A stretch of DNA of 64,000 nucleotides from positions 82,560 through 146,559 of the forward strand of contig NW_015167630.1 in NCBI RefSeq assembly GCF_001447785.1. Direction: 5' to 3'. Source of the stretch: Gekko japonicus. Taxonomy: Eukaryota. Both the position numbers and the translations under genes were made by a program. Positions 1 to 56,200 of this stretch are shown here, piece by piece. The first letter of the stretch is position 1. The number at the start of each line of letters is the position of its first letter. The notes beneath the pieces were generated by a model. That model was given only the letters and a program-made list of their open reading frames with translations, had not been told where the DNA came from and ran no database searches.

Positions 1-72
1 GAGAGAGATCTTGGAGTTGTAGTAGATAACTCACTGAAAATGTCGAGACAGTGTGTGACTGCAATAAAAAAA
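1..72 (+). mobile_element. CR1 LINE ORF2 fragment
   Basis: Translates ERDLGVVVDNSLKMSRQCVTAIKK, a typical post-RT CR1 motif. Confidence 0.8.
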
Positions 73-29470: not shown

Positions 29471-31428
29471 GGTGTTGAATCCAAACTTTGCAAAAATGCA
29501 CACTAAAGATGTCAGACATCTCAGTTTTTTGTCAGGTATCTAACAATGAAAGCTTATACCCTGGAACTTTCGTTGGCCTGTAAGGTGCTGTTGGACTCAA
29601 ACTCAGCTTTTCAGAAGAGGGGTGTGATCAAAATGATGGCCAGAATCCAAAAGAAGTGCTTTGGACTTGGCCATGGACTTCAGTGCCCTGTATATTTAAA
29701 CTATTAAGGAAAGTAGACCATCATGTCTGCTCATCACAATGCTTTTAGAAGTCTCTCATATTCAAACTTGGAGCTCCGGCACAGCAGAGGCAACAGAAAC
29801 TTGGGGGCTGTTGTAACCTACACCCTTCTATCCATTAATTGTATATTTTTGTAGTATTTTAATAGCCTAGATCCTATTTTAAGGACTCGGCAGTAGAAGC
29901 AGAAAAGCCCGCAGTTAATAGTGTTGCTCCTCACAGGTAACATTATGGTAGGAAGCCTCAGTACGAGGATATTATTACCAACAAAGCAAGAATCAAAGAT
30001 GATAAAAATATTTGCAAAATAAATGTTGCTTCCTGGGAGAGTGCCCTAACCTTGAAGGAAAACTATTTGAATTGGGGCACATTAACCAGAAATACTGTAC
30101 CACATGTTAAAATACAAGGGACCATCTGGGGGAAATTAGCTTATAGAAGGATGGTCTGTTAATCTTATATTGAGTCTCCTGAACAATTTCTCTTGAACAG
30201 CATATTAGCTGACTTTGAAATCAAACCTACTTACCGGAATTTGAATAAATTGAATAATATTCCCAGAATGAAGCAATTTTCTGAATTAAAGATGAAATGA
30301 TAAATTCTGTCATTAATTAAAAATACTTCTTTAAAAAGCAAAAAACTCCTCTCTGATGTCACAACTAAACCCAAGCCAAACACAAAACATTAACTTGGTA
30401 GATGCAAATTTATTATCATGTAGTCAGAAGTCAATTAAAAGATATTCTTGGCCTCCTGGTATTATTTATTGAAAACAAAAATTTCAAAGCATTTGCATCT
30501 CATTTGTACAAAGGGTTTCCATACTTTGAAATAAGATTTTTTTCTGCTGTTGAGGACAAAGTATGACAAGTAAGAAGATAATATAAATGTAGAGAAATAG
30601 TGGGCTAAACTGGGAGGGGGGGACGACAACAATAACCTACTTGGAGTGGGTTTTTCAATACTCCCTTTGGGGAGAATGATGCACTAGAGAGATGTAATGG
30701 GATATTTTCCTAAGAGAGCAACTGGAAGATTCTTATTGCTCAAGCCGAAATGCACTTTCTGGGAAAAGGCTTTCGGCTGGAGAGTTGTCAGCGTTGCTCT
30801 TTGGAAAGGAACGTGTGCTTCTCTCCGAAGGTACATATGAACCTCCGTCTTCTAATCGTGTTTTGGAAGAATTCCCATTGAGTTCAACTGATCTTTCAAA
30901 CAACCGTGCTAAGTGTCGTAGGATTAATTTACTGATCATTAAATGTTATTTGGTATAAATAATTAAAATAACTATTACAATACATTTTTAAAAGTGGAAA
31001 TACAATTTAAAAGTGAATGTTTAAATTTTTTTACTTCGTGTGATTCTAAGCAATATCATCAACATCATTTACTTGGACAGGAAAACAAGCTTTGAGAGAT
31101 GGGTGTTTTTGTGGTAAATCTTCAATTGATAATGATACCACAATGATAAAATGTACCACATTTTTTCACTGAAAGGACATTGTGTTGTTTTTGTAAGCCA
31201 TAAGGACCAGAAATAGTAACTGGAGTTTGGCTTCCTAAGATCAGCATCAGTGGTAAAACATGGCCCCATCTGCGGGTATTTAAATCTGTAGGTCAGGGCC
31301 ATGAAGAGCGAAAGAACATTTCCCTATGTACTTTGGGCAATCCCTCCGTTTTGCAGAAAAACATAAAACATTTTTTAAAATGTAGGAGAAGGGGTTAAAT
31401 CCACCCCATATGAAGGAGCATCACAGAA

Positions 31429-32960
31429 AATGCATTCATTTGTCTGTGCCATTTCCGCATGGAAACTCTGAGAGCAGTAGCGGATTCCTTATCTCCCAAC
31501 AAGTACCTGACGTCCATAGATCTTACGGAAGCATATCTCCATATGCCGATCCACACAAGAGGTATCTCTGTTTTTACATCTGTGGTCAGCACTTCCAGTA
31601 CAGAGCTCTCCCCTTTGGTCTTTCCACAGCGCCCAGGCTGTTCACCAAACTGATCATCAATCCTGTGAGTCATCTCAGAAGCCAGGGGACTCATGTGCAT
31701 CCGTACTTAGATGATTTGTTGGTCCAGGCCAGCACACGGCTAGAATCCATACAAAACACAGAAAAGACCCTACAGTGTCTGCGCAGTCATGGATTTCTAA
31801 TCAATCTCGAGAAGAGCTCTTTAATTCCATGTCAGCACCTGGGTCAGACACCTGGGTGCGGTGATCGACACCACGCATGCTGCCCTGTTTCTACCAAGGT
31901 CCAAGGCACAGAAGATCAAGACCATCGCTACACAGGTCTACCACTGCAGATCTTCAGCCTTGATGGAGTTGGCCAGTCTTCTGGGTCTCATGATTGCCAG
32001 CATCGACATGATCCAAGGGGGCCATATGCATGCCAGACCATTGCAAATGTTTCTTCGCCCTCATCAGCTAAACATCATACAAAGGAAGACGATCAACCTG
32101 CAGGTTCCCCTCAAGGTCAAGGAAAGCCTGCGTTGGTGGACGGACATGAAGAACCTTACCACTGGGAAGAACTACTATGTTTGTCACACCATGGAGCTGT
32201 TCACTGACGCCAGTCTCCAGGGCTGGGGGGCGACGCTAGAGGGTGTTTCGGTCCAAGGGATCTGGTCACCAGCCGAGAGGTCTCTTCCGAACAATCTTCT
32301 GGAAATAAGGGTGATTCGTTTAGCTCTGATCCACTTCACCTTCCGGCTGCAGGGACAACACGTGTTGGTGAGAATGGACAACATTTCTGCCAAAGCTTAT
32401 CTAAACAAGCAGGGAGGTTCCCGATCCTGCCAACTGCACAAGGAGGCAATGAAGATGCTCATCTGGGCAGAGAGAAGTATTGCTTCCTTGAGGGCGTAAC
32501 ACATAAGAGGGATCAAGAACGTCCAGGCAGACTGGCTCAGCAGGGAAACGTTGCAGGAGGGAGAATGGGCTCTCCATCCAAACTTTTTCATCAGGTTAGT
32601 GAAACATTTCGGACAACCTATACTGGGCTTGTTTGCTTCACCAAAGAACCACAAGCTGTTGAGATTTTATAGCAGATACTTCCATCAGGACGCAGGGGCA
32701 ATGGATGCCCTCACGACGAGATGGCCTCAGGGATTGCTGTACGTGTTTCCGCCATTTATCCTGATATCCAGGACTCTCCGCAGAATCAGGGAACTCAAGG
32801 CGGAGGTCATCTTGGTGGGCGACATGTCCATGGTTTTCGGAACTGCAGAAGATGTCGATCCTTCCACCGTTGGTCTTACCGGTGTCTCCAGACATGATCT
32901 CCCAGGGACCAGTGTGGCACCCGGATCCGGCCTGGTTATGTCTGACCGCGTGGAGATTGA
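31429..32960 (+). pseudogene. DIRS pol-like ORF (RT-RNaseH-MT), frameshifted, with a stop at 32497-32499
   Basis: Pieces in ORFs 31459-31653, 31410-32207, 31861-32499 and 32551-33378; LRA*HIRGIKNVQADWLSR reads through the stop. Confidence 0.9.
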
Positions 32961-33930
32961 GCGGCACAGCTTAGCAGAGTTGGGATTCTCTACCCAGGTC
33001 ATGGACACTATCATGGCTTCCAGACGGAAATCCACGACTCATATATACAACACTACCTGGAAGGCCTTCGTCAGATGGTGTAGGCGCAAGAAGGTAACTG
33101 CGCTATCTCCATCTGTAGCTTCGCTTCTGTCATTCTTGCAGGGTGGATTGGATGCAGGTCTCCAAGCCTCCACTCTACGTAGACAGCTGGCGATGTTATC
33201 AACGGTCCTACCTTCTTTGGAGGGTTTCAAGATTACCAAGCACCCCCATATTTGTTTATTTTTGCAGGGGGCTGTGGCCAAATCTCCTCCACAAATGCAT
33301 CACTTTCCTACGTGGAGATTGAACATTGTGCTTGATGCTCTCATGAAAGCGCCATTTGAACCTCTCAGGGAGGTCTGAAATGGCTGAGAATGAAGACCTT
33401 GTTTCTCGTTGCCATCACGTCGGCAAGGAAAGTTTCTGAACTTGGTGCATTGTCAGTAAAGTCATCCTGCTGCATGTTCCACAAGGACAAGGTGGTGCTT
33501 CTGACGGATCCTACGTTCCGGCCCAAGGTGTATTCCAGATTTCACTGGTCACAAGAAATATGTCTACCCATCTTCTGTCCTCACCCCAAACACCCTAAGG
33601 AACATCTCTGGCACACCTTAGATGTTAAAAGAGCCCTCAAGATTTACATTGCAAGGACGGAGTCTTGGAGGAAGACTGAATCTTTGTTCATAGGTATTTC
33701 CCCACCACGCAAAGGGGAAAAGATGTCGAGATCAACTATCAGTTCAGTTTTGAAGTCCTGCATTGTGGAAACTTACCGGGCTTCTGGACGTGATCCTCCC
33801 AGTGGCATCACGGCACATTCACCAATGCAGCGTTGTTTAACAGGGCATCAGTGGAGGAAGTCTGTAGAGCTGCAACGTGGTCCTCCATCTCTACCTTTAC
33901 AAGACATTACAAGATCCACACTGTAGCATC
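32950..33930 (+). pseudogene. DIRS tyrosine recombinase, disrupted
   Basis: RRKSTTHIYNTTWKAF N-terminal domain, MKTLFLVAITSARKVSEL, ITAHS followed by a frameshift, then TWSSISTFTRHY in another frame. Confidence 0.9.
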
Positions 33931-46527: not shown

Positions 46528-47502
46528 ATGGGGAAAACCGGAATAACATGGTCCAACAAAAAATATATGAACTCTCAACAATTAACCAGATATCTGGTTA
46601 AAGAAACCGAAAAATCTCCGAGCCAGCGGGCCGCAGAACGCCAAGAGAAAATGGCGGAGACTTTATCAGATGACGACGACGGAGCTATGCTATCCCGGCG
46701 CGAATTCCATAAAACTATACACCACTTGGAAAGCACGATAGTGGAACAAATTCAACTTGCTTTAAAACCATTTTCAAAAGAACTCAAACAAATCACACAA
46801 ACGCTTGCCGAGGTGTCCCAAGCAGCGGAGACTGCCCTGGAGACCGCCATCGAATCACAAGAAGACATACGCAACCTCCAAAAAGCCGAAATGTGGGCCA
46901 AAACAAAGATCATGCTCCTAGAAAACAGACAGCGAGAAAGTAATTTAAAACTCCGAAATCTGCCCGAAAAAGCGGAAGGTGAGCAAGATTTAAGAATATT
47001 TATTGCGACGTGGCTTGCACAAGAGTTAAAACTTGAGGACGGAATAGCCCCCCTCATAGACAAGGTTTACCGCTTAGGCCCCATAACGAAAAAAACAGAA
47101 AAATTTCCCAGAGATGTTCTCGCCACATTTCCCGATAGTCGAACCAGGGACGCCATTTTACGAAAATCAAGGGAAGAAAAAGGGCTAACTTACCACAATA
47201 CCAAAGTGTTAGTCCTTCTTGACTTGTCACAAGAAACTCTCCAGCATAGGAAGAATATCAGCTTCATTACAGAAAAATTAACGGCTAATAACATCCGCTA
47301 CCGTTGGATCTCCCCTACGGAGCTACAAGTTCTCCACGATGGCCAAAGATACCATGCAGACGACCTAGACAGCGGGTACCAACTGCTAACAACACTCGGC
47401 ATCCCATACGAGCCTCTACCTGCTCCACCACCCGACGATCAACCACCACTTAAGCCTTCAGAAGAGTCATCCTCCTTACGCTGGCAGTCAGTCCACCGCT
47501 GA
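46528..47502 (+). CDS. L1 ORF1p (coiled coil, RRM, CTD), uninterrupted 324 aa
   Basis: LENRQRESNLKLRNLPE, DKVYRLGP, PRDVL and LDLSQETLQHRK motifs typical of L1 ORF1p. Confidence 0.92.
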   Translation: MGKTGITWSNKKYMNSQQLTRYLVKETEKSPSQRAAERQEKMAETLSDDDDGAMLSRREFHKTIHHLESTIVEQIQLALKPFSKELKQITQTLAEVSQAAETALETAIESQEDIRNLQKAEMWAKTKIMLLENRQRESNLKLRNLPEKAEGEQDLRIFIATWLAQELKLEDGIAPLIDKVYRLGPITKKTEKFPRDVLATFPDSRTRDAILRKSREEKGLTYHNTKVLVLLDLSQETLQHRKNISFITEKLTANNIRYRWISPTELQVLHDGQRYHADDLDSGYQLLTTLGIPYEPLPAPPPDDQPPLKPSEESSSLRWQSVHR

Positions 47503-48245: not shown

Positions 48246-50466
48246 TACCTGTTGTTGTTGTTTTTCTTTACAAGATACCTTATTCATTGAAAGTGATGTC
48301 AACCCATATTTCTTTTATAGTGCAAACTCTTTAAAGGCTTTACAATAATTTTCTTAGAAAACAGTTGTTCAGAGCTTATTAACCAAGCTTTATCCTTTTG
48401 GTGAAGTTAACCAACTTATATTACTAATTTATAGAATCCAAGCCTTTGTATATGTCTTTTTTACCCAGTCAGGCTGATATCCTTTGTTTGCAGTCTTGGA
48501 AACCTATTGTTTATTTTTTTTACTCAGGGGTACTATAAAAGCATTTAAGCTCACTAAGGAAGGTAATTTACTTATTCTATGAAACTCAAAATTAACAATT
48601 GTTACCTTATCATGCTTTATATAGAAGAGGTTATATCACATTAGAATTTGAATCATTACATTGTTCATCATAGAGAAACTGTTTATTTCAACTAACAAGG
48701 GATGGGAGGGTGGGAGGAGGGTTTTTCCCTATTGCCCCCCTACATTATCTCAATTTTTCATTCTGTTTGTGTAATAATACATTTTTATAAGCTTTACCCT
48801 ATTAAATATAGGGTAAGCTACAATTAGATACCCTCTTAGGAGGAAGATATCCCCCCTTCTTACAATTTGGAAGAAGAGGGCATATACAGTTGATGCCATG
48901 CAACCAATAGGGTTGTCACGGCTTAGTTTTTGTTATTGTAGTTTATGTACTAGTTTTGATCCCTTGCTTATCTTGTTGTCCATATACGTCTTCTCCTGCC
49001 ATGAACGTTCATCCAAGATACAGTACACACTTGTGTTTTTCTTGATACCAAATGGATAATACCCTAAAAATAATCTCTTTAAATTGTAGGGGCTTAAATA
49101 GCAAATGCAAGTCTAGAAAAATTTCTAATGCCTTGGTGAAAATACGGCCTGATATTCTTCTCTTACAAGAGACTCACTTAAGACGTTCATCTCAACCTAT
49201 TTTTAAAAACAAATGGTTCGCTTACCAATACCAAGCGCATGGCTCCTCCTCATCTCGAGGAGTAGCCATTTTATTTTCTAAAAACACGTTCAATTTGATT
49301 GCCATGACCAACTTATAGATGTTAAGGGACGTTTTTTATTTTTAAAAGGTCTGCTGAATAACACCTTGATGACAATTGGATCTATATATGCTCCCAATGT
49401 AGGACAAGAAATTTGTTTACGTGAAACCTTTGTATCTCTTGGAAATTTCCAAGCACGACACATTATGTTGGGTGATTTTAACACAATCCCAAATTATTTT
49501 TTGGGACAGATCCTATAACCCCTCACTCCCGAAAAAATATAACGCGAATTCCAAATTTACATCGCCTTTTCAGTTAATTTTAGACCAACAGGGGCTATGT
49601 GATGTGTGGAGAATCCACCATCCCGGTATGAAAGATTACACCTATTTTTCCCCCCGACATCAGGTATATACGAGAATAGACGCTATTTTAGTTTCCTCGG
49701 CATTAATTAACCAAATACAATCCTCTGAAATTGGACTGCGCACCCTATCCGATCACGCCTGGACGGAATGTTCCCTCGACCTACAACCAAACGAACCACA
49801 CACCAGATCTTGGTCCTTAAATAAAAATATTTTATTCAGTCAAAGTGCTTGCGAGAACATAGAAAAATCTTTAGAAGAATTTTTCAAATTTAACAAATCC
49901 GATGAAGTCCCATTGCCAGTGATTTGGGACGCTAAAAAAGCCTTTATAAGGGGGAAATTCATCGCAGTCACAGCAGCTTACAATAAACAAAGAAATAAAA
50001 TAAGACAAACAATCTTAAACAACATCAAACTTTATGAAGATAAACATAAAAAACGGGTTCAAAACGCATTTATAAGCTCCTCCTTTTAGAACGTAAAAAA
50101 TTAGAATCACTTGAAACTTCGCAGGTGCAAAAACAATTATTATACTTGAAACATAAGTATTGGTTTAAACACCCTCGTTCCCTAAAACTTTTAGCTTCGA
50201 AAATTAAACAGCAACAATTACTTCGAAACACAAACTCATTAAGGGACTCCCAAGGGAAAATAATTACTTCCACTAAGGATATCCTTAATACCTTTCAACG
50301 TTACTTCCAACAATTATATAGCACCGATAACCCTTCTCCCACTCTTATTACCAAATTTTTAGAAACCAAAGACGTTATTAAAAAATTATCTCTTTACCAT
50401 AGTAAAAAGATGGAAGCCCCATTCACTCAACAGGAGTTATTATCTGCCATTAAACGCACAAAATCC

Positions 50467-51856
50467 GGAGTTTCCGGTGGCTGTGAGATTGCGCAGTCAG
50501 ACCGAGAGAGCCTCCGCGTCCTAGCTCCAAAGAATGCAAAATAAAGACTAATTGAGGACCATAAAGATAAAAACAACTTGCTGATAAGAATGGGGAAGCA
50601 AAGAGGAGGAAAAGGAGGGAAAGCAGCCAAGAAAAATAACGAGGGAGCTCAACAAACTGAGCAAACTATGCAACCATCGGATGATGACGCCCCCCCCCCA
50701 TTTGAACTCAACTCCGAAGAAGAGGCACCTAGCCGGCAGAGTAAAAGGAAACGTGAGGATTCAATTACCAAAAAAGATATACAGACTATGCTGGTAGAAA
50801 TGAAAAAAGAAATTAAAGACAGCATCACCCCTATCTATCAGAAACTGGACGCTATGAATCTCAGCCTAACAGATCTGCGGCAAAGAACTGATCAGGCACT
50901 GACGCAAACAGCTAAAAATAAGCAGGATATACAAAGCCTGAAGACCTTTGAGANNNNNNNNNNNNNNNNNNNNNNNNNNNNNNNNNNNNNNNNNNNNNNN
51001 NNNNNNNNNNNNNNNNNNNNNNNNNNNNNNNNNNNNNNNNNNNNNNNNNNNNNNNNNNNNNNNNNNNNNNNNNNNNNNNNNNNNNNNNNNNNNNNNNNNN
51101 NNNNNNNNNNNNNNNNNNNNNNNNNNNNNNNNNNNNNNNNNNNNNNNNNNNNNNNNNNNNNNNNNNNNNNNNNNNNNNNNNNNNNNNNNNNNNNNNNNNN
51201 NNNNNNNNNNNNNNNNNNNNNNNNNNNNNNNNNNNNNNNNNNNNNNNNNNNNNNNNNNNNNNNNNNNNNNNNNNNNNNNNNNNNNNNNNNNNNNNNNNNN
51301 NNNNNNNNNNNNNNNNNNNNNNNNNNNNNNNNNNNNNNNNNNNNNNNNNNNNNNNNNNNNNNNNNNNNNNNNNNNNNNNNNNNNNNNNNNNNNNNNNNNN
51401 NNNNNNNNNNNNNNNNNNNNNNNNNNNNNNNNNNNNNNNNNNNNNNNNNNNNNNNNNNNNNNNNNNNNNNNNNNNNNNNNNNNNNNNNNNNNNNNNNNNN
51501 NNNNNNNNNNNNNNNNNNNNNNNNNNNNNNNNNNNNNNNNNNNNNNNNNNNNNNNNNNNNNNNNNNNNNNNNNNNNNNNNNNNNNNNNNNNNNNNNNNNN
51601 NNNNNNNNNNNNNNNNNNNNNNNNNNNNNNNNNNNNNNNNNNNNNNNNNNNNNNNNNNNNNNNNNNNNNNNNNNNNNNNNNNNNNNNNNNNNNNNNNNNN
51701 NNNNNNNNNNNNNNNNNNNNNNNNNNNNNNNNNNNNNNNNNNNNNNNNNNNNNNNNNNNNNNNNNNNNNNNNNNNNNNNNNNNNNNNNNNNNNNNNNNNN
51801 NNNNNNNNNNNNNNNNNNNNNNNNNNNNNNNNNNNNNNNNNNNNNNATATAAACAT
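50467..51856 (+). mobile_element. Second L1-like element nested in host ORF2 (5' UTR and ORF1 start; remainder in an assembly gap)
   Basis: AAAATCC duplicated at 50460-50466 and 51857-51863; ORF MGKQRGGKGGK...DIQTMLVEMKKEIKDSI with coiled-coil character; host ORF2 rejoins as TKS|NKAPGRDG. Confidence 0.8.
50954..51846. other. Assembly gap (other gaps: 17934-18073, 25639-25826, 28593-28757, 35705-35720)
   Basis: Runs of N. Confidence 1.
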
Positions 51857-53781
51857 AAAATCCAATAAAGCACCAGGAAGGGACGGCCTCCCAATTGAAT
51901 ATTATAAAAAATTCACCTTATCACTTGCAACCCCTCTGTTAGAAATTTGTAATCATGTCCAACAAACTGGCAATATACCAGATTCCTGGACAGAAGCAAA
52001 GATCGTAGTTATTCCCAAAAAAGGGAAAGATGCCGAGATCCCTCAATCTTACCGACCTATTTCACTCCTTAATAGTGATTATAAAATTTTCACTTCTATG
52101 TTAACATCCCGTCTTAATAATTTTATCAGTCACTATATACATACGAATCAATCTGGCTTTATTCCCCAAAGAGAGCTTACTGACAACATCAGAAAAACAC
52201 TTGGTCTAATTTTTTATGCAAAACGATACTTATCAGACGTTTGTTTCTTAGCTTTGGATATAGAAAAAGCGTTTGATAAGGTAGAACCCTTATTCCTATC
52301 TAAAGTGATTAGTGCAATGGGCTTTGGCCCCAATTTTCAAAAAATTATCCACGCTTTATACAAACAGCCCAAAGCACACGTAGTTATTAACAATTCTTTT
52401 TCAGAAAATTTTTTCTTAACCCGAGGCACCCGCCAGGGGTGCCCACTTTCACCCTTTTTATTTGCCATTGCTATAGAGCCTTTGGCTAATATAATAAGAA
52501 ATTCTGATAATATACCAGGTATTAATATATCCCATCACTCTCATAAAATAAGTTTATTTGCCGACGATTTTGTTTTATATGTTAGTCAACCTCACATTGC
52601 TTTACCAATGATAGAAACCCACTTACTTAATTTTGCAACCCTCTCCGGACTTCATGTTAATCAAGCCAAAACCATTTTATACCCAGTAAATTTATCCCAC
52701 CCTATGAAGAACTTTATTCAAGAAAACTTTCACTACCAATGGGTTTCACAATATTGGCTATATCTTGGAGTCAAAATTCCCTTAAACTTAGATACGTTAT
52801 ATAAAATTAACTATACTGAATTATCTAACAATACCAATAACATTTTATCTCAATGGCAAGAAAAGAACCTTTCCTGGATGGAAAAAATCTTAATACTTAA
52901 AACATTTATATTTACCAAATTTCTTTACCTCTTTAGAGCCCTTCCTCTCCTGATACCACCATCGCAATTCACCCTTTGGCAAACACAATGGACAAAATAC
53001 ATTTGGAATCACCGACACCCCCGGGTTAAATACACCACTCTATGCCGCTTTTCATCTTTAGGTGGGTTAGCCTTACCTAATTTAAAATCATACTACGAAG
53101 CAACGATCCTCAAAATGGTGCTAAAAATTTTAAAAGCAGACCCCCAACCCGAATGGATAGGAATTGAAGAATTCTTTTTGCAACAATCCTCGTATATAAT
53201 GACCCTTTGGCAAAAAACCACAGAGAAAACTTATAATATTCAACAACACCCCTTTATGCTTTCTCTTTTTAAAATCTGGAACATAAAGCGGTGCATCCTT
53301 CTACCTGAATTATCGCTCATGTCTTCATTTTACGGTCAAACCTGGTTTCCTCTGGCATTCCCTCAAAATACCTTTTTAAAATGGAAAAAAGCAAAATTAA
53401 CTACACTCCATGATCTTACACGTAGGCAACACCTCTTAGAAAAAACCAAACTAGACACTAAAGCCCAGACGTCTTTACCATGGTTGGAATATCTCCAAAT
53501 CCGACACCTTTTCGCTACACCAAAATTACAAAAGGCATGCGTGACCCCGTATACAAATTTTGAGAAGCTCTTGGTTGCTACCGATGGTTCCTCCAAAAGT
53601 CTAATCTCTTCTATTTATAAAATTCTGTTGGACCCAAAACCCCATAAGCTTCCTACATACACAAATTCATGGTCAAAGGATCTTAGCACAAAGTTCGACG
53701 AACCCTTTTGGGAATCTGTATGGTCCTCATATGCCTTTAAGACCAAATCAATTAATGTGTTCCAACAGAATTATAAGATTA

Positions 53782-54694
53782 CTAGGGAGCAAGGCCCGTT
53801 GCGAAGGGCTATACAACGGGCGGCTAGCCCCCCCTCCTCGCGCCCTGCCCCTCTCGGCCGTGACCGAGGTGGCAGCCGCTGTTAGCCTTCGCACGGCGCT
53901 GCCCCCCCGCAAAATTAGTTATACTGTTACTGTTTCCAGTTAACTTCACTGACAAGCACAAGAGGACATCATAAATGGATTATAGGTAAACTAGGGAGCA
54001 AGGCCCGTTGCGAAGGGCTATACAACGGGCGGCTAGCCCCCCCTCCTCGCGCCCTGCCCCTCTCGGCTGTGACTGAGGTGGCAGCCAGTGTTAGCCTTCG
54101 CCCAGCGCTGCCCCCCCCCTGTCCTGACCCAGTTGGCTGCCGGGCTTAGGCTGCTGTCCGCCGTGCCGAGCCACTCGCGGCTCTCCTCCGCTCGGCTGCA
54201 GCCCCCCTCCCTCTCTGCGCACCGACCCAGGCGGCTGGCGGCCTTAGCATGCTGCCCGTCGTCCCCAGCCACTCGGACCTGTCGGGTCTCCTCCGGCCGG
54301 CTCTCGGCCCCTTCCCCTGTCTGGCCCGACCCTGGCGGCTGCCGGTCGACTCGCGCCTCCCCTCCGCCCGGCTCTCGCCCCCTTCCCCTCTCGGGCTCGA
54401 TCCAGGCGGCTGCGGTTCGACTCGCACCTCTCCTCTGCTCAGCTCTCGCCCCCTCTCCTCACCGACCCAGGCGGCTGCAGGTGTGAGCCTGCGGCTCGTC
54501 GTCCCCAGGCACTGGCGCGTCTCGGCTCTCCTCCGAATCCTCCGCAGGCCACGGGAAGCTGCGTGCACGGCGGGACTCAAACGACGTGGCCAATGGGATG
54601 TGGCCAAGCTGTTGACAGGCAGGCGAGCCGCCCAAACACTGTAGGGGCGCATTGCGTGCAGTTTGCGTCTTACTGCTTTATAATATAGGGAGGA
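53782..54694 (-). mobile_element. Non-autonomous Helitron with duplicated 3' terminus
   Basis: Minus strand 5'-TCCTCCCTATATTATAAA...CTAG-3'; inserted between A and T with no TSD; subterminal hairpin gcccgttg / caacgggc; removal restores ORF2 NYKIITRWYLTP. Confidence 0.93.
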
Positions 54695-56200
54695 TTACGA
54701 GGTGGTACCTTACCCCTTTAAAACTGCACAAAATTAACTCCTTCCCCCCTTTGTTGGAGAGGTTGCGGAAATGTTGGATCTTACATCCACTGTTGGTGGG
54801 AATGTCCGGTGGTAAAATCCTTTTGGCAAAGGGTACTATTGGAAATTGAGAATCTTACAGGATACAAAGTCCCTATGAAACCCGAGATTTTAATCCTAAA
54901 TAATTGGAAAGAGTTAAATATTCCCCAATATGGTAAGGAATTACTTACGATGTTATCGTCAGCGGCTAAAACTACAATTGCCCAACAATGGAAAGACACT
55001 CATACATTAAGTTTAAGTTCTTGGTTTTCTAACATTTGGAACCATTTATTGATGGATAGAATTTCAGACAAACTATCTTGTTTTGAATCCTCTAAACAAA
55101 TAGATACCTTCTACGGTAGATGGCATTCAATTTTGGATCACTTGGAATATATATTAGGACAACTTCCAAACTCGCAACAATCACAATATTTTTCTTTTAT
55201 TCGTAAACATTGGATACTGTAAAGGTACCTATCTATTGCCACTTTAACTTTGGATTTATAGAAGTGTTACTTACCTTGTTTTTAGAAAGAAAGTACAACT
55301 TCGGGATCAACATTAATTATTGTTTTGTTTGTTAGTGTTACTGCGTGTATTGTCACTGTTAATATGTTATTATAATGTTGATTGTGTTTACTTTTGAAAA
55401 TAATAAAATATTTTATTTTAAAAAAAATCTTGGGACTTCAGCAACAGCTCGGGGTCTCTAGGAATCTATAATCAGTCATTAAACATGTTTTGCTACAGCT
55501 GAAATCACATCAAGTGATGTCCTGTCCCTTTACTAAAGGGGAAATAGCCCTAACTTGTTCCTCATCCTCTGATGTGGCAGACCCAACTGCCGCCCAGAGA
55601 GTCCTCCTCTCCCCAGTACAATGCTGAGTCCCAAGACAACGGGCAGCATCTAGCCCAGCATCTACCTGCACCACAATGTGTGTTTCCTGTATGCGCAGAG
55701 ATAAGGGTGCCAGCTGTCTGGTTACTGGTTCTAGGATCCATGCCTACTTGGCCTCAGAGTCTTTGGGCCTTTCCTCTGATAGAAAGGGATCCAGGTCCAT
55801 GATAGCCAGGAACAGATATGCTTCCTCAAAGACAAACTGAAGAAGCAGAGGTGAAGAGCAATGGCCAGAATGTCCGACTGACAGGAAAACATTTAAGTTG
55901 ATGGGTGGTATGCATCAAAGCCCAACAATCCTTTCACTTACAAGTGGAAGTATGAGCAGCATTTCTTTTTTTTTAATTAAGATTTTTATTGTTGTCACAC
56001 AAAGAAGTCGACATAGCAAACAAGCCCCGTATATCCCATCCCCTCCCTCTTTCCTAATGTGTCCTTTTAGCAGAGAAGGAAAGAGAGAGCGAAAAAGAAA
56101 GTAAGGCAGGAGAGCCAGGTTAACAAAGCAAGGTGCAACATTATGGATTCAATTAAACAGGGAATAAAGGTGAGGAGATATCATTGCTCAAATAGGTACA

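What the first reader, a model, noticed from the sequence alone, without database searches (positions are those of the whole stretch)
53782..54694. Non-autonomous Helitron inserted into L1 ORF2; removal restores the reading frame exactly
Seen: on the minus strand the 913-bp insert starts TCCTCCCTATATTATAAA and ends CCCTAG, lies between host A (53781) and T (54695), has no TSD, and carries an 8-bp GC-rich hairpin (53794-53801 / 53814-53821) close to the CTAG. Joining the flanks gives TAT AAG ATT ATT ACG AGG TGG = YKIITRW, continuing L1 ORF2. Established: TC...CTRR ends, an A|T target and a 3' hairpin define canonical Helitrons. Inference: the high CpG content suggests a recently active rolling-circle family in this reptile.
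Basis: partly seen in the sequence, partly recalled or inferred. Interest (0 to 1): 0.8.

Follow-up and report, generated by a model that had tools for sequence, protein, structure and literature searches.

The report
Non-autonomous Helitron inside a lizard L1
A 913-base non-coding rolling-circle transposon (Helitron) carrying two copies of its own 3' end sits inside the reverse-transcriptase gene of a dead L1 retrotransposon in a lizard genome; it is a clean textbook example, not a new kind of element.

Summary
On the minus strand, 53782-54694 begins TCCTCCCTATATTATAAA and ends GCTCCCTAG. It lies between host A and T. An 8-bp stem (GCCCGTTG/CAACGGGC) sits 12 nt before its end, and it has no terminal inverted repeats.

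- Both ends belong to a family of about 50-60 copies (at least 85% alike). Their reads leave this locus exactly at 53781/53782 and at 54692-54695, running into unrelated AT-rich flanks.
- Two contigs from paralogous L1 copies lack exactly 913 bases, so no target duplication was made. This excludes a 3-bp TTA duplication.

The host is a true L1 ORF2 (human ORF2p, E 2.6e-62).

The element has a second, internal 3' end (53991-54117). It is followed by an 82-bp single-copy spacer, which most likely records a bypass of the first end.

"Recently active" is only partly supported. CpG observed/expected is 0.80, but no near-identical copy was seen. No RepHel partner could be searched for.

Closest described relatives are Heli1Xen1 of lacertid and cordylid lizards (near-identical hairpin motif) and Helibat/Helraiser (similar 5' end).

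The scan already holds 77 Helitron notes for this genome, including this doubled end (s1-824299). The finding is ordinary.

The parts
53782..54694 (-). Whole inserted unit: a non-autonomous Helitron of 913 bp, 5' TC ... CTAG 3', between host A and T
   Evidence: Sequence. Two empty-site L1 contigs lack exactly 913 bases. No Pfam domain and no homologue for its longest ORF.
54572..54694 (-). 5' terminal segment (left terminal sequence), TCCTCCCTATATTATAAAGC...; the most repeated part of the element
   Evidence: Summed depth is 45-62 per run in bin 54597-54653, against 1-8 in the L1 flanks. Loose ends behind 54692 and 54695 run into unlike flanks. Loose ends before 54572 agree 0.85-0.9, so most relatives share only this segment and then continue into a different common body.
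54118..54571 (-). GC-rich (73%), CpG-rich non-coding body with a 71-bp tandem repeat (54290-54454, 2.3 units) and looser 87-bp and 50-bp repeats
   Evidence: Depth about 6-25 per run, meaning roughly 10-25 copies share it. No Rfam match.
53991..54117 (-). First (internal) 3' end: hairpin 54003-54030, CTAG at 53991-53994, followed by T at 53990
   Evidence: 95% identical to the terminal 3' end, and the last 78 nt are identical. Reads of other copies leave the locus at 53989.
53909..53990 (-). 82-bp AT-rich spacer (33% GC, no CpG) between the two 3' ends; probably host DNA carried along
   Evidence: Depth 0-1 per run, i.e. single copy, while both sides are at 10-33. No match elsewhere in the window.
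53782..53908 (-). Second (terminal) 3' end: hairpin arms 53794-53801 and 53814-53821, CTAG at 53782-53785
   Evidence: Loose ends before 53780/53781 in all three raw-read runs run into unlike AT-rich flanks.
51847..53781 (+). Host L1 ORF2, part upstream of the insertion (reverse transcriptase and following domains); open from the N run up to the insert
   Evidence: RVT_1 E 3e-27. Human L1 ORF2p residues 547-1082, E 2.6e-62. Open frame.
54695..55222 (+). Host L1 ORF2, part downstream of the insertion: (I)TRWYLTPLKLHKINSFPP, a frameshift near 54750, then ...CWRGCGNVGSYIHCWWECP... to the stop at 55220-55222
55223..55427 (+). L1 3' untranslated region, AATAAA signal and A-run
50578..50953 (+). ORF1-like N-terminus of an L1, running into the N stretch 50954-51846 (which I did not fill)
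   Evidence: No Pfam match. Its assignment to the same L1 copy is inferred from position only.

Best explanation
This is a non-autonomous canonical Helitron (the group with TC...CTAG ends and an A|T target) that inserted, in antisense orientation, into the C-terminal part of ORF2 of an L1 retrotransposon.

It encodes nothing. Copies of its family must have been moved in trans by a RepHel transposase from an autonomous element with matching ends. In the mechanism established for Helraiser, the transposase nicks at the 5' TC and unwinds 5' to 3'. It pauses at the 3' hairpin and cuts after CTAG. The single-stranded circle is then pasted between A and T of an AT-rich target without duplicating it.

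The inserted unit is a composite of three pieces: a 704-bp element ending at a first CTAG (53991), 82 bp of single-copy AT-rich DNA starting with T, and a 127-bp second 3' end. The most likely history is that a 704-bp element lay 82 bp upstream of a 5'-truncated relative at a previous locus. The transposase read through the first end and terminated at the second. The whole 913-bp unit then landed here.

Shown: the ends, the target, the absence of a duplication, the multi-copy family, the single-copy spacer, and insertion of the 913 bp as one unit. Inferred: the RepHel-driven mechanism, the end-bypass history, and the non-coding body as a remnant of, or cargo on, an autonomous element.
For: Structure
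- 5' TC, 3' CTAG, neighbours A and T.
- No inverted repeat links the two ends.
- An 8-bp stem lies 12 nt before the end. In Helraiser the palindrome lies 11 nt before the end (PMC4778049).

Family evidence from raw reads of three animals at about 0.9x each
- Depth is 45-62 at the 5' end and 26-33 (plus 11-19 on the internal copy) at the 3' end, against 1-8 in the L1 flanks.
- Loose ends with low agreement (about 0.5, meaning many different flanks) lie before 53780/53781 and behind 54692/54695. The matching part always keeps the A at 53781, and for the 54695 class the T at 54695.
- The 54692 class fits a variant 5' end, TCTCCC..., followed by host T on the plus strand.

Empty sites
- Two Logan contigs of paralogous L1 copies bridge 53779 -> 54695 (2 letters between) and 53779 -> 54699 (6 letters between). 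Each lacks exactly 913 bases.

Host and unit
- The host is L1 ORF2 and the frame arithmetic fits.
- The spacer is single copy. The L1 is continuous only if all 913 bases are removed, so the composite inserted as one unit.

Published parallels
- Read-through and use of a pre-existing 5'-truncated Helitron as a new end are documented for Helraiser and Helibat.
- Terminal motifs match published vertebrate Helitrons. Heli1Xen1 of Lacertidae and Cordylidae has TC/CTAG ends, a TA-rich 5' motif and a 3' hairpin CCCGTTA...TAACGGG (PMC12001565). Here the hairpin is CCCGTTG...CAACGGG.
Against: - No RepHel gene with these ends was found. There is none in the window, and the genome could not be searched.
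- The hairpin's folding energy is no better than shuffled sequence (z -1.0).
- The empty-site evidence rests on one contig each, from L1 paralogues that are about 10% diverged. It does not come from an orthologous empty allele.
- Loose-end consensus letters are averages over different flanks, so the A|T rule across the family is read from where the matches stop, not from aligned individual copies.
- The end-bypass history cannot be told apart from recombination between two related elements.
Confidence: 0.9

Rival explanations
1. A cut-and-paste MITE of the PIF/Harbinger type that duplicated a 3-bp TTA target. TTA stands on both sides of the insert.
For: The plus-strand flanks read ...GATTA | insert | TTACG.... 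PIF/Harbinger elements make TWA duplications (established knowledge).
Against: No terminal inverted repeats. Both paralogous L1 contigs keep the full length of the joined flanks and lack 913 bases, not 916. The ends are TC and CTAG with a subterminal hairpin at one end only.
Confidence: 0.02
2. The segment is not an insertion but a lineage-specific part of this L1 subfamily, or filler DNA put in during repair of a break.
For: Nothing beyond the fact that L1 copies can carry internal rearrangements.
Against: Depth jumps from 1-8 to 26-62 exactly at the boundaries, and reads of other copies leave into unrelated flanks. Paralogous L1 contigs lack the segment. GC is 67% against 35%. Removing it leaves the frame intact.
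Confidence: 0.02
3. It is a Helitron, but the doubled 3' end arose at this locus after insertion and not by end bypass before it. Possible routes are unequal recombination or gene conversion with another family copy, or a nested second insertion followed by a deletion.
For: The two 3' ends differ at 6 of 127 positions, several of them CpG sites, and their last 78 nt are identical. That pattern would also fit a late conversion. 7 of the 11 bases after the obligatory T behind the two CTAGs agree, including a shared TATAAT.
Against: The spacer starts with T right after CTAG, as a host flank of an earlier insertion would. It is single copy and unlike the L1 beyond 12 nt. A tandem duplication would have copied the L1 flank, which is not seen. 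The similarity behind the two CTAGs has a chance probability of about 0.015 (my estimate), and the family's AT-rich, TATA-like target preference visible in the loose-end consensus explains it.
Confidence: 0.12

Closest known systems
Heli1Xen1 Helitron family (Xenopus; horizontally transferred to Lacertidae and Cordylidae lizards, toads, bichirs). Li & Pollet 2025, PMC12001565
   Same: TC start and CTAG end. A TA-rich motif near the 5' end: TATATAAA in the paper, TATATTATAAA here. The 3' hairpin motif is almost the same: CCCGTTA...TAACGGG in the paper, CCCGTTG...CAACGGG here, i.e. one stem pair changed on both sides. It is present in lizards as hundreds to thousands of short non-autonomous copies.
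   Different: The family's sequences are not held by any tool here, so identity over the last 30 bp and over the body could not be measured. The family here is small (about 50-60 copies at 85% or more), and its copies are 5-15% diverged. Heli1Xen1 is described as invading 0.6-11 million years ago.
Helibat1 / Helraiser (bat Helitron). Grabundzija et al. 2016, PMC4778049
   Same: TC/CTAG ends, an A|T target without duplication, and a palindrome 11 nt (here 12 nt) before the 3' end. There are documented cases of read-through of the 3' end and of a pre-existing 5'-truncated Helitron serving as the new end. By eye, the first 35 nt of the Helraiser left end printed in the paper's supplement match this element's 5' end at about 72-74% after one 4-nt gap. 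The first 7 nt here are TCCTCCC where Helraiser has TCC; both then run into TATAT.
   Different: The 3' end is different: another hairpin sequence and another last 12 nt. The body is unrelated, GC-rich, non-coding DNA. The host is a lizard, not a bat.
Non-autonomous Helitron families of Anolis carolinensis (Helitron-1N1_AC, Helitron-2N1..5_AC). Novick et al. 2010, PMC3014272
   Same: Short (0.5-2 kb) non-coding derivatives in a lizard genome. They far outnumber their autonomous partners, sit at TA/AT targets, lack inverted repeats, and some carry foreign DNA.
   Different: Neither the species nor the family relationship could be tested. The Anolis families reach 66 to more than 1,000 copies at 1-3% divergence for most of them, so they are larger and younger than what is seen here.

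Membership tests
Canonical Helitron (Helitron1 type) | 5' end TC and 3' end CTRR | tested here: met
   TCCTCCC... and ...CCCTAG. Family reads stop matching at these very positions.
Canonical Helitron (Helitron1 type) | Insertion between host A and T without target-site duplication | tested here: met
   Neighbours are A and T. Two paralogous L1 contigs lack exactly 913 bases.
Canonical Helitron (Helitron1 type) | No terminal inverted repeats | tested here: met
   The repeat finder with seed 7 reports no inverted pair joining the two ends.
Canonical Helitron (Helitron1 type) | Short palindrome or hairpin about 10-12 nt upstream of the 3' end | tested here: met
   GCCCGTTG/CAACGGGC, with 12 nt to the end. 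Its energy is not exceptional (z -1.0). Covariation among copies could not be tested.
Canonical Helitron (Helitron1 type) | Dispersed multi-copy family sharing the ends, at unrelated loci | tested here: met
   Depth 26-62 at the ends against 1-8 in the flanks. Loose ends agree only about 0.5 with one another.
Canonical Helitron (Helitron1 type) | An autonomous partner encoding RepHel (HUH nuclease plus Pif1-like helicase) with the same ends | not testable with these tools
   None in the window. No tool searches this genome. Earlier scan notes mention RepHel remnants elsewhere in the genome; I did not check them.
Heli1Xen1 | 3' hairpin CCCGTTA...TAACGGG, a TA-rich 5' motif and TC/CTAG ends | tested here: inconclusive
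   Six of the 7 stem pairs are the same and the 7th is changed on both sides. The 5' motif is similar and TC/CTAG is met. A motif match is not a family assignment.
Heli1Xen1 | At least 80% identity over the terminal 30 bp of the 3' end. This is the family criterion of Thomas et al. 2010 (PMC2997563). | not testable with these tools
   The consensus sequences are in supplementary data that are not held.
PIF/Harbinger MITE | Terminal inverted repeats and a 3-bp TWA duplication | tested here: not met
   No inverted repeats. The empty sites are not 3 bases shorter.
Helentron / Helitron2 | Asymmetric terminal inverted repeats and insertion between T and T | tested here: not met
   No inverted repeats at the ends and the target is A|T. 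The defining features are taken from general knowledge of the group.

The most novel reading that the evidence does not exclude
The element belongs to a lizard branch of the horizontally transferred Heli1Xen1 lineage. On this reading, the copy is a one-off product that records an end-bypass event: a 704-bp element plus 82 bp of its former flank, terminated at a neighbouring truncated relative. The donor locus may still exist in the genome, which would give a natural before-and-after pair for Helitron 3' transduction in a reptile.
Probability: 0.3. Interest if true: 0.35.

Novelty: new member of a known kind. Interest (0 to 1): 0.2.

Why it matters
As an annotation it is solid. It marks an L1 copy as disrupted and supplies exact ends for a small Helitron family in this lizard. 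It also gives a clean natural example of a Helitron with two 3' ends enclosing single-copy DNA, the structure expected when the transposase runs past its stop signal. That is the route by which Helitrons pick up host sequence. None of this is new in principle: Helitrons in lizards, their non-autonomous derivatives and end bypass are all published. It would gain some value if the family proves to be part of the Heli1Xen1 horizontal-transfer network, or if the donor locus of the 82-bp spacer is found.

Tried and rejected
- **Other copies in the window.** blastn of the insert and pattern searches of both ends with up to 3 mismatches found only the insert itself and its internal 3' end.
- **Copies through predicted proteins.** The 168-aa ORF of the insert has no Pfam domain and no relative in the word search. 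That route to other genomic copies failed.
- **Protein-level check of the junction.** A word search with the last 182 residues of the upstream L1 part, limited to E 1e-10, returned nothing. My threshold was too strict for distant L1s, and close L1s of this species are evidently not in the collection.
- **Downstream flank against solved structures.** The 37 residues matched nothing.
- **Viral and metagenome contigs.** Scans with the 20-nt 3' end and the 18-nt 5' end found nothing for the 3' end. The 5' 18-mer gave 8 metagenome hits that do not extend past 18-21 nt, so they are chance matches.
- **Rfam on the insert and flanks.** Nothing.
- **RepHel in the window.** The 10 ORFs of 150 aa or more outside the L1 and its insert (the ORF1-like one as its unmasked N-terminal 125 aa) gave only reverse-transcriptase and RNase H hits.
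- **Earlier scan notes by sequence.** Blank.
- **Readings rejected.** A TTA duplication (Harbinger), an L1-internal segment, and a tandem duplication as the origin of the second 3' end. Reasons are given under the rival explanations.

Full report
**1. The observation**

Read on the minus strand, the sequence is ...GGTACCACCTCGTAA | TCCTCCCTATATTATAAAGCAG ... CAACGGGCCTTGCTCCCTAG | TAATCTTATAATTC... The insert is 53782-54694, 913 bases. It is 67% GC with 79 CpG (observed/expected 0.80) and sits in flanks of 34-36% GC.

The DNA fold gives 8 Watson-Crick pairs plus one G-T pair, and 12 nt follow the stem to the end. The energy (-13.6 kcal/mol) is not better than shuffles of the same GC-rich 60-mer (z = -1.0). 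The hairpin is therefore real, but by itself it is not statistically remarkable. No inverted repeat connects the two ends.

**2. The host and the reading frame**

- *Upstream flank.* It is open from the N stretch up to the insert. It carries RVT_1 (E 3e-27) and aligns to residues 547-1082 of human L1 ORF2p (E 2.6e-62). The host is a true L1.
- *Frame.* Codons upstream start at positions divisible by three, so a codon starts at 53781. Downstream, the frame that reads (I)TRWYLTPLKLHKINSFPP has a codon at 54694-54696. Since 913 = 1 mod 3, base 53781 and bases 54695-54696 form one codon, and the frame runs on as ...NYKI-I-TRWY... I worked this out from the two flanks translated separately and left the joined step out.
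- *Other damage.* The L1 is broken in any case. About 55 nt after the insertion the frame shifts, and the zinc-knuckle-like CWRGCGNVGSYIHCWWECP is read in another frame. The stop is at 55220-55222 and an A-run follows near 55420.

**3. Evidence from outside the window**

One reads search found runs of the same species (coded organism A). I laid three raw-read whole-genome runs (about 1.68 Gb read from each, roughly 0.9x if the genome is near 1.8-2 Gb) and one set of Logan contigs on 53400-55100, at 85% likeness or more. Four results matter.

(a) *Depth.*

| Region | Summed depth per run |
|---|---|
| L1 flanks | 1-8 |
| Terminal 3' end (53799-53855) | 26-33 |
| Internal 3' end | 11-19 |
| GC-rich body | 6-25 |
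| 5' end (54597-54653) | 45-62 |
| Bin 53913-53969 (spacer) | 0-1 |

The two ends therefore belong to a family of roughly 50-60 copies, the body to perhaps 10-25, and the spacer is single copy.

(b) *Loose ends.* Reads from other copies stop matching before 53780/53781 and behind 54692/54695. Their continuations agree only about 0.5 with one another, which means many different AT-rich flanks.
- The matching part always includes A 53781, and in the 54695 class also T 54695. These are the host T after CTAG and the host A before TC on the element strand.
- The 54692 class continues with A-T-A-A. That fits a sister 5' end, TCTCCCTATAT..., again next to a host A.
- A further class leaves at 54572 with 0.85-0.9 agreement. 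Most relatives share only the first 123 nt and then continue into another, common body. Shared ends with different bodies are typical of Helitrons.

(c) *Empty sites.* One contig joins 53779 to 54695 with CC in place of TA. Another joins 53779 to 54699 with six other letters in place of six. Both are paralogous L1 copies that lack exactly 913 bases. It also removes the one structural ambiguity: TTA stands on both sides of the insert, and a 3-bp duplication would require empty sites three bases shorter.

(d) *Age.* Reads at 99% identity or more number 14-15 per run, which is what this single locus yields at this coverage. Most reads are 85-95% alike. Of the 14 best-supported positions where the family majority differs from this copy, 7 are CpG in the family and TpG or CpA here. 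The element is younger than the surrounding sequence (CpG o/e 0.20-0.41). So is its L1 host (0.59-0.66). Nothing shows current activity.

**4. The doubled 3' end**

The last 127 nt (53782-53908) recur at 53991-54117 at 95% identity, and the final 78 nt, including the hairpin and CTAG, are identical. Between them lie 82 nt of AT-rich, CpG-free, single-copy DNA that begins with T directly after the first CTAG.

The L1 is continuous only if all 913 bases are taken out, so the composite arrived as one unit. The simplest history has three steps:
1. A 704-bp element lay 82 bp upstream of a 5'-truncated relative.
2. The transposase ran past the first stop and ended at the second.
3. The resulting unit was pasted here.

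Both read-through and the use of a neighbouring truncated Helitron as a new end are documented experimentally and in bat genomes (PMC4778049).

After the obligatory T, the next 11 bases behind the two CTAGs agree at 7 positions, sharing TATAAT. I estimate the chance probability at about 0.015. I attribute the match to the family's preference for TATA-like AT-rich targets, which also shows in the loose-end consensus. A tandem duplication is excluded because the similarity stops there. Another first-stage note (s1-824299) proposed the same end-bypass reading; my tests agree with it.

**5. Mechanism**

The element has no coding capacity. Its longest ORF is 168 aa of low complexity, with no Pfam hit and no relatives. 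It must have been mobilised in trans by a RepHel protein. The steps are taken from the Helraiser work and are not shown here:
1. The protein nicks at TC.
2. It unwinds 5' to 3'.
3. It pauses at the hairpin.
4. It cuts after CTAG.
5. A single-stranded circle forms.
6. The circle integrates between A and T.

**6. Comparison with known families**

- *Canonical Helitron.* All testable defining features are met. The one that is not testable is the autonomous partner.
- *Helraiser.* The 5' end resembles the Helraiser left end printed in that paper's supplement. By eye it is about 72-74% alike over 35 nt after a 4-nt gap. The 3' end does not resemble Helraiser's.
- *Heli1Xen1.* The 3' hairpin motif is one compensated base pair away from the motif given for Heli1Xen1. 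That family is reported in Lacertidae and Cordylidae, with TC/CTAG ends and a TA-rich 5' motif. I could not obtain its sequences, so family membership stays open.
- *Anolis.* Anolis carolinensis has eight described Helitron families, six of them non-autonomous.
- *Horizontal transfer.* Transfer of Helitrons into lizards is published.

**7. Verdict**

The thing itself is ordinary: a new or not-yet-matched member of a well-known kind. This scan already holds 77 Helitron notes for the genome, one of them followed up with a similar verdict.

Noticed in passing
window 53783-53789 and 54686-54692: The 7-mer CTCCCTA (element strand) stands at both ends of the Helitron: TC-CTCCCTA-TAT at the 5' end and TTG-CTCCCTA-G at the 3' end. 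The circle junction would therefore read CTCCCTAG|TCCTCCCTAT. This could reflect one nuclease recognising similar sequence at both cleavage sites, or it could be chance.
   Followed up: no
window 54572: Most family members share only the first 123 nt of the 5' end. They then continue into a different, mutually consistent body (loose-end agreement 0.85-0.9 in all runs). That body may belong to the main non-autonomous family or to the autonomous element.
   Followed up: partly
window 54583-54607: Two copies of GA(C/T)GTGGCCAA lie 14 nt apart. On the element strand they read TTGGCCAC(G/A)TC, with ATTGG upstream of the first copy only, and a 73% GC, CpG-rich stretch follows. This looks like a promoter or CpG island carried by the element. 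Expression could not be tested because the run search was already used for DNA.
   Followed up: no
window 54740-54760: The host L1 ORF2 has its own frameshift about 55 nt downstream of the Helitron. One paralogous contig carries extra letters at 54740-54742. The L1 copy is therefore dead independently of the insertion.
   Followed up: partly
window 31410-33926: A run of ORFs with reverse-transcriptase (RVT_1, E 6e-12) and RNase H-like (weak) matches. This is probably an LTR-type retroelement remnant, unrelated to the finding.
   Followed up: no
window 50578-51852: The ORF1-like start of an L1 runs into an 893-base N stretch (50954-51846). The distance from ORF1 to the reverse-transcriptase region looks about 1 kb too short for a full L1. 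Either the copy is internally deleted or the N run does not reflect true length.
   Followed up: no
window 46528-47502 and 49421-50089: Two long ORFs (324 and 222 aa) just upstream of the L1 have no Pfam match. I did not examine them further.
   Followed up: no
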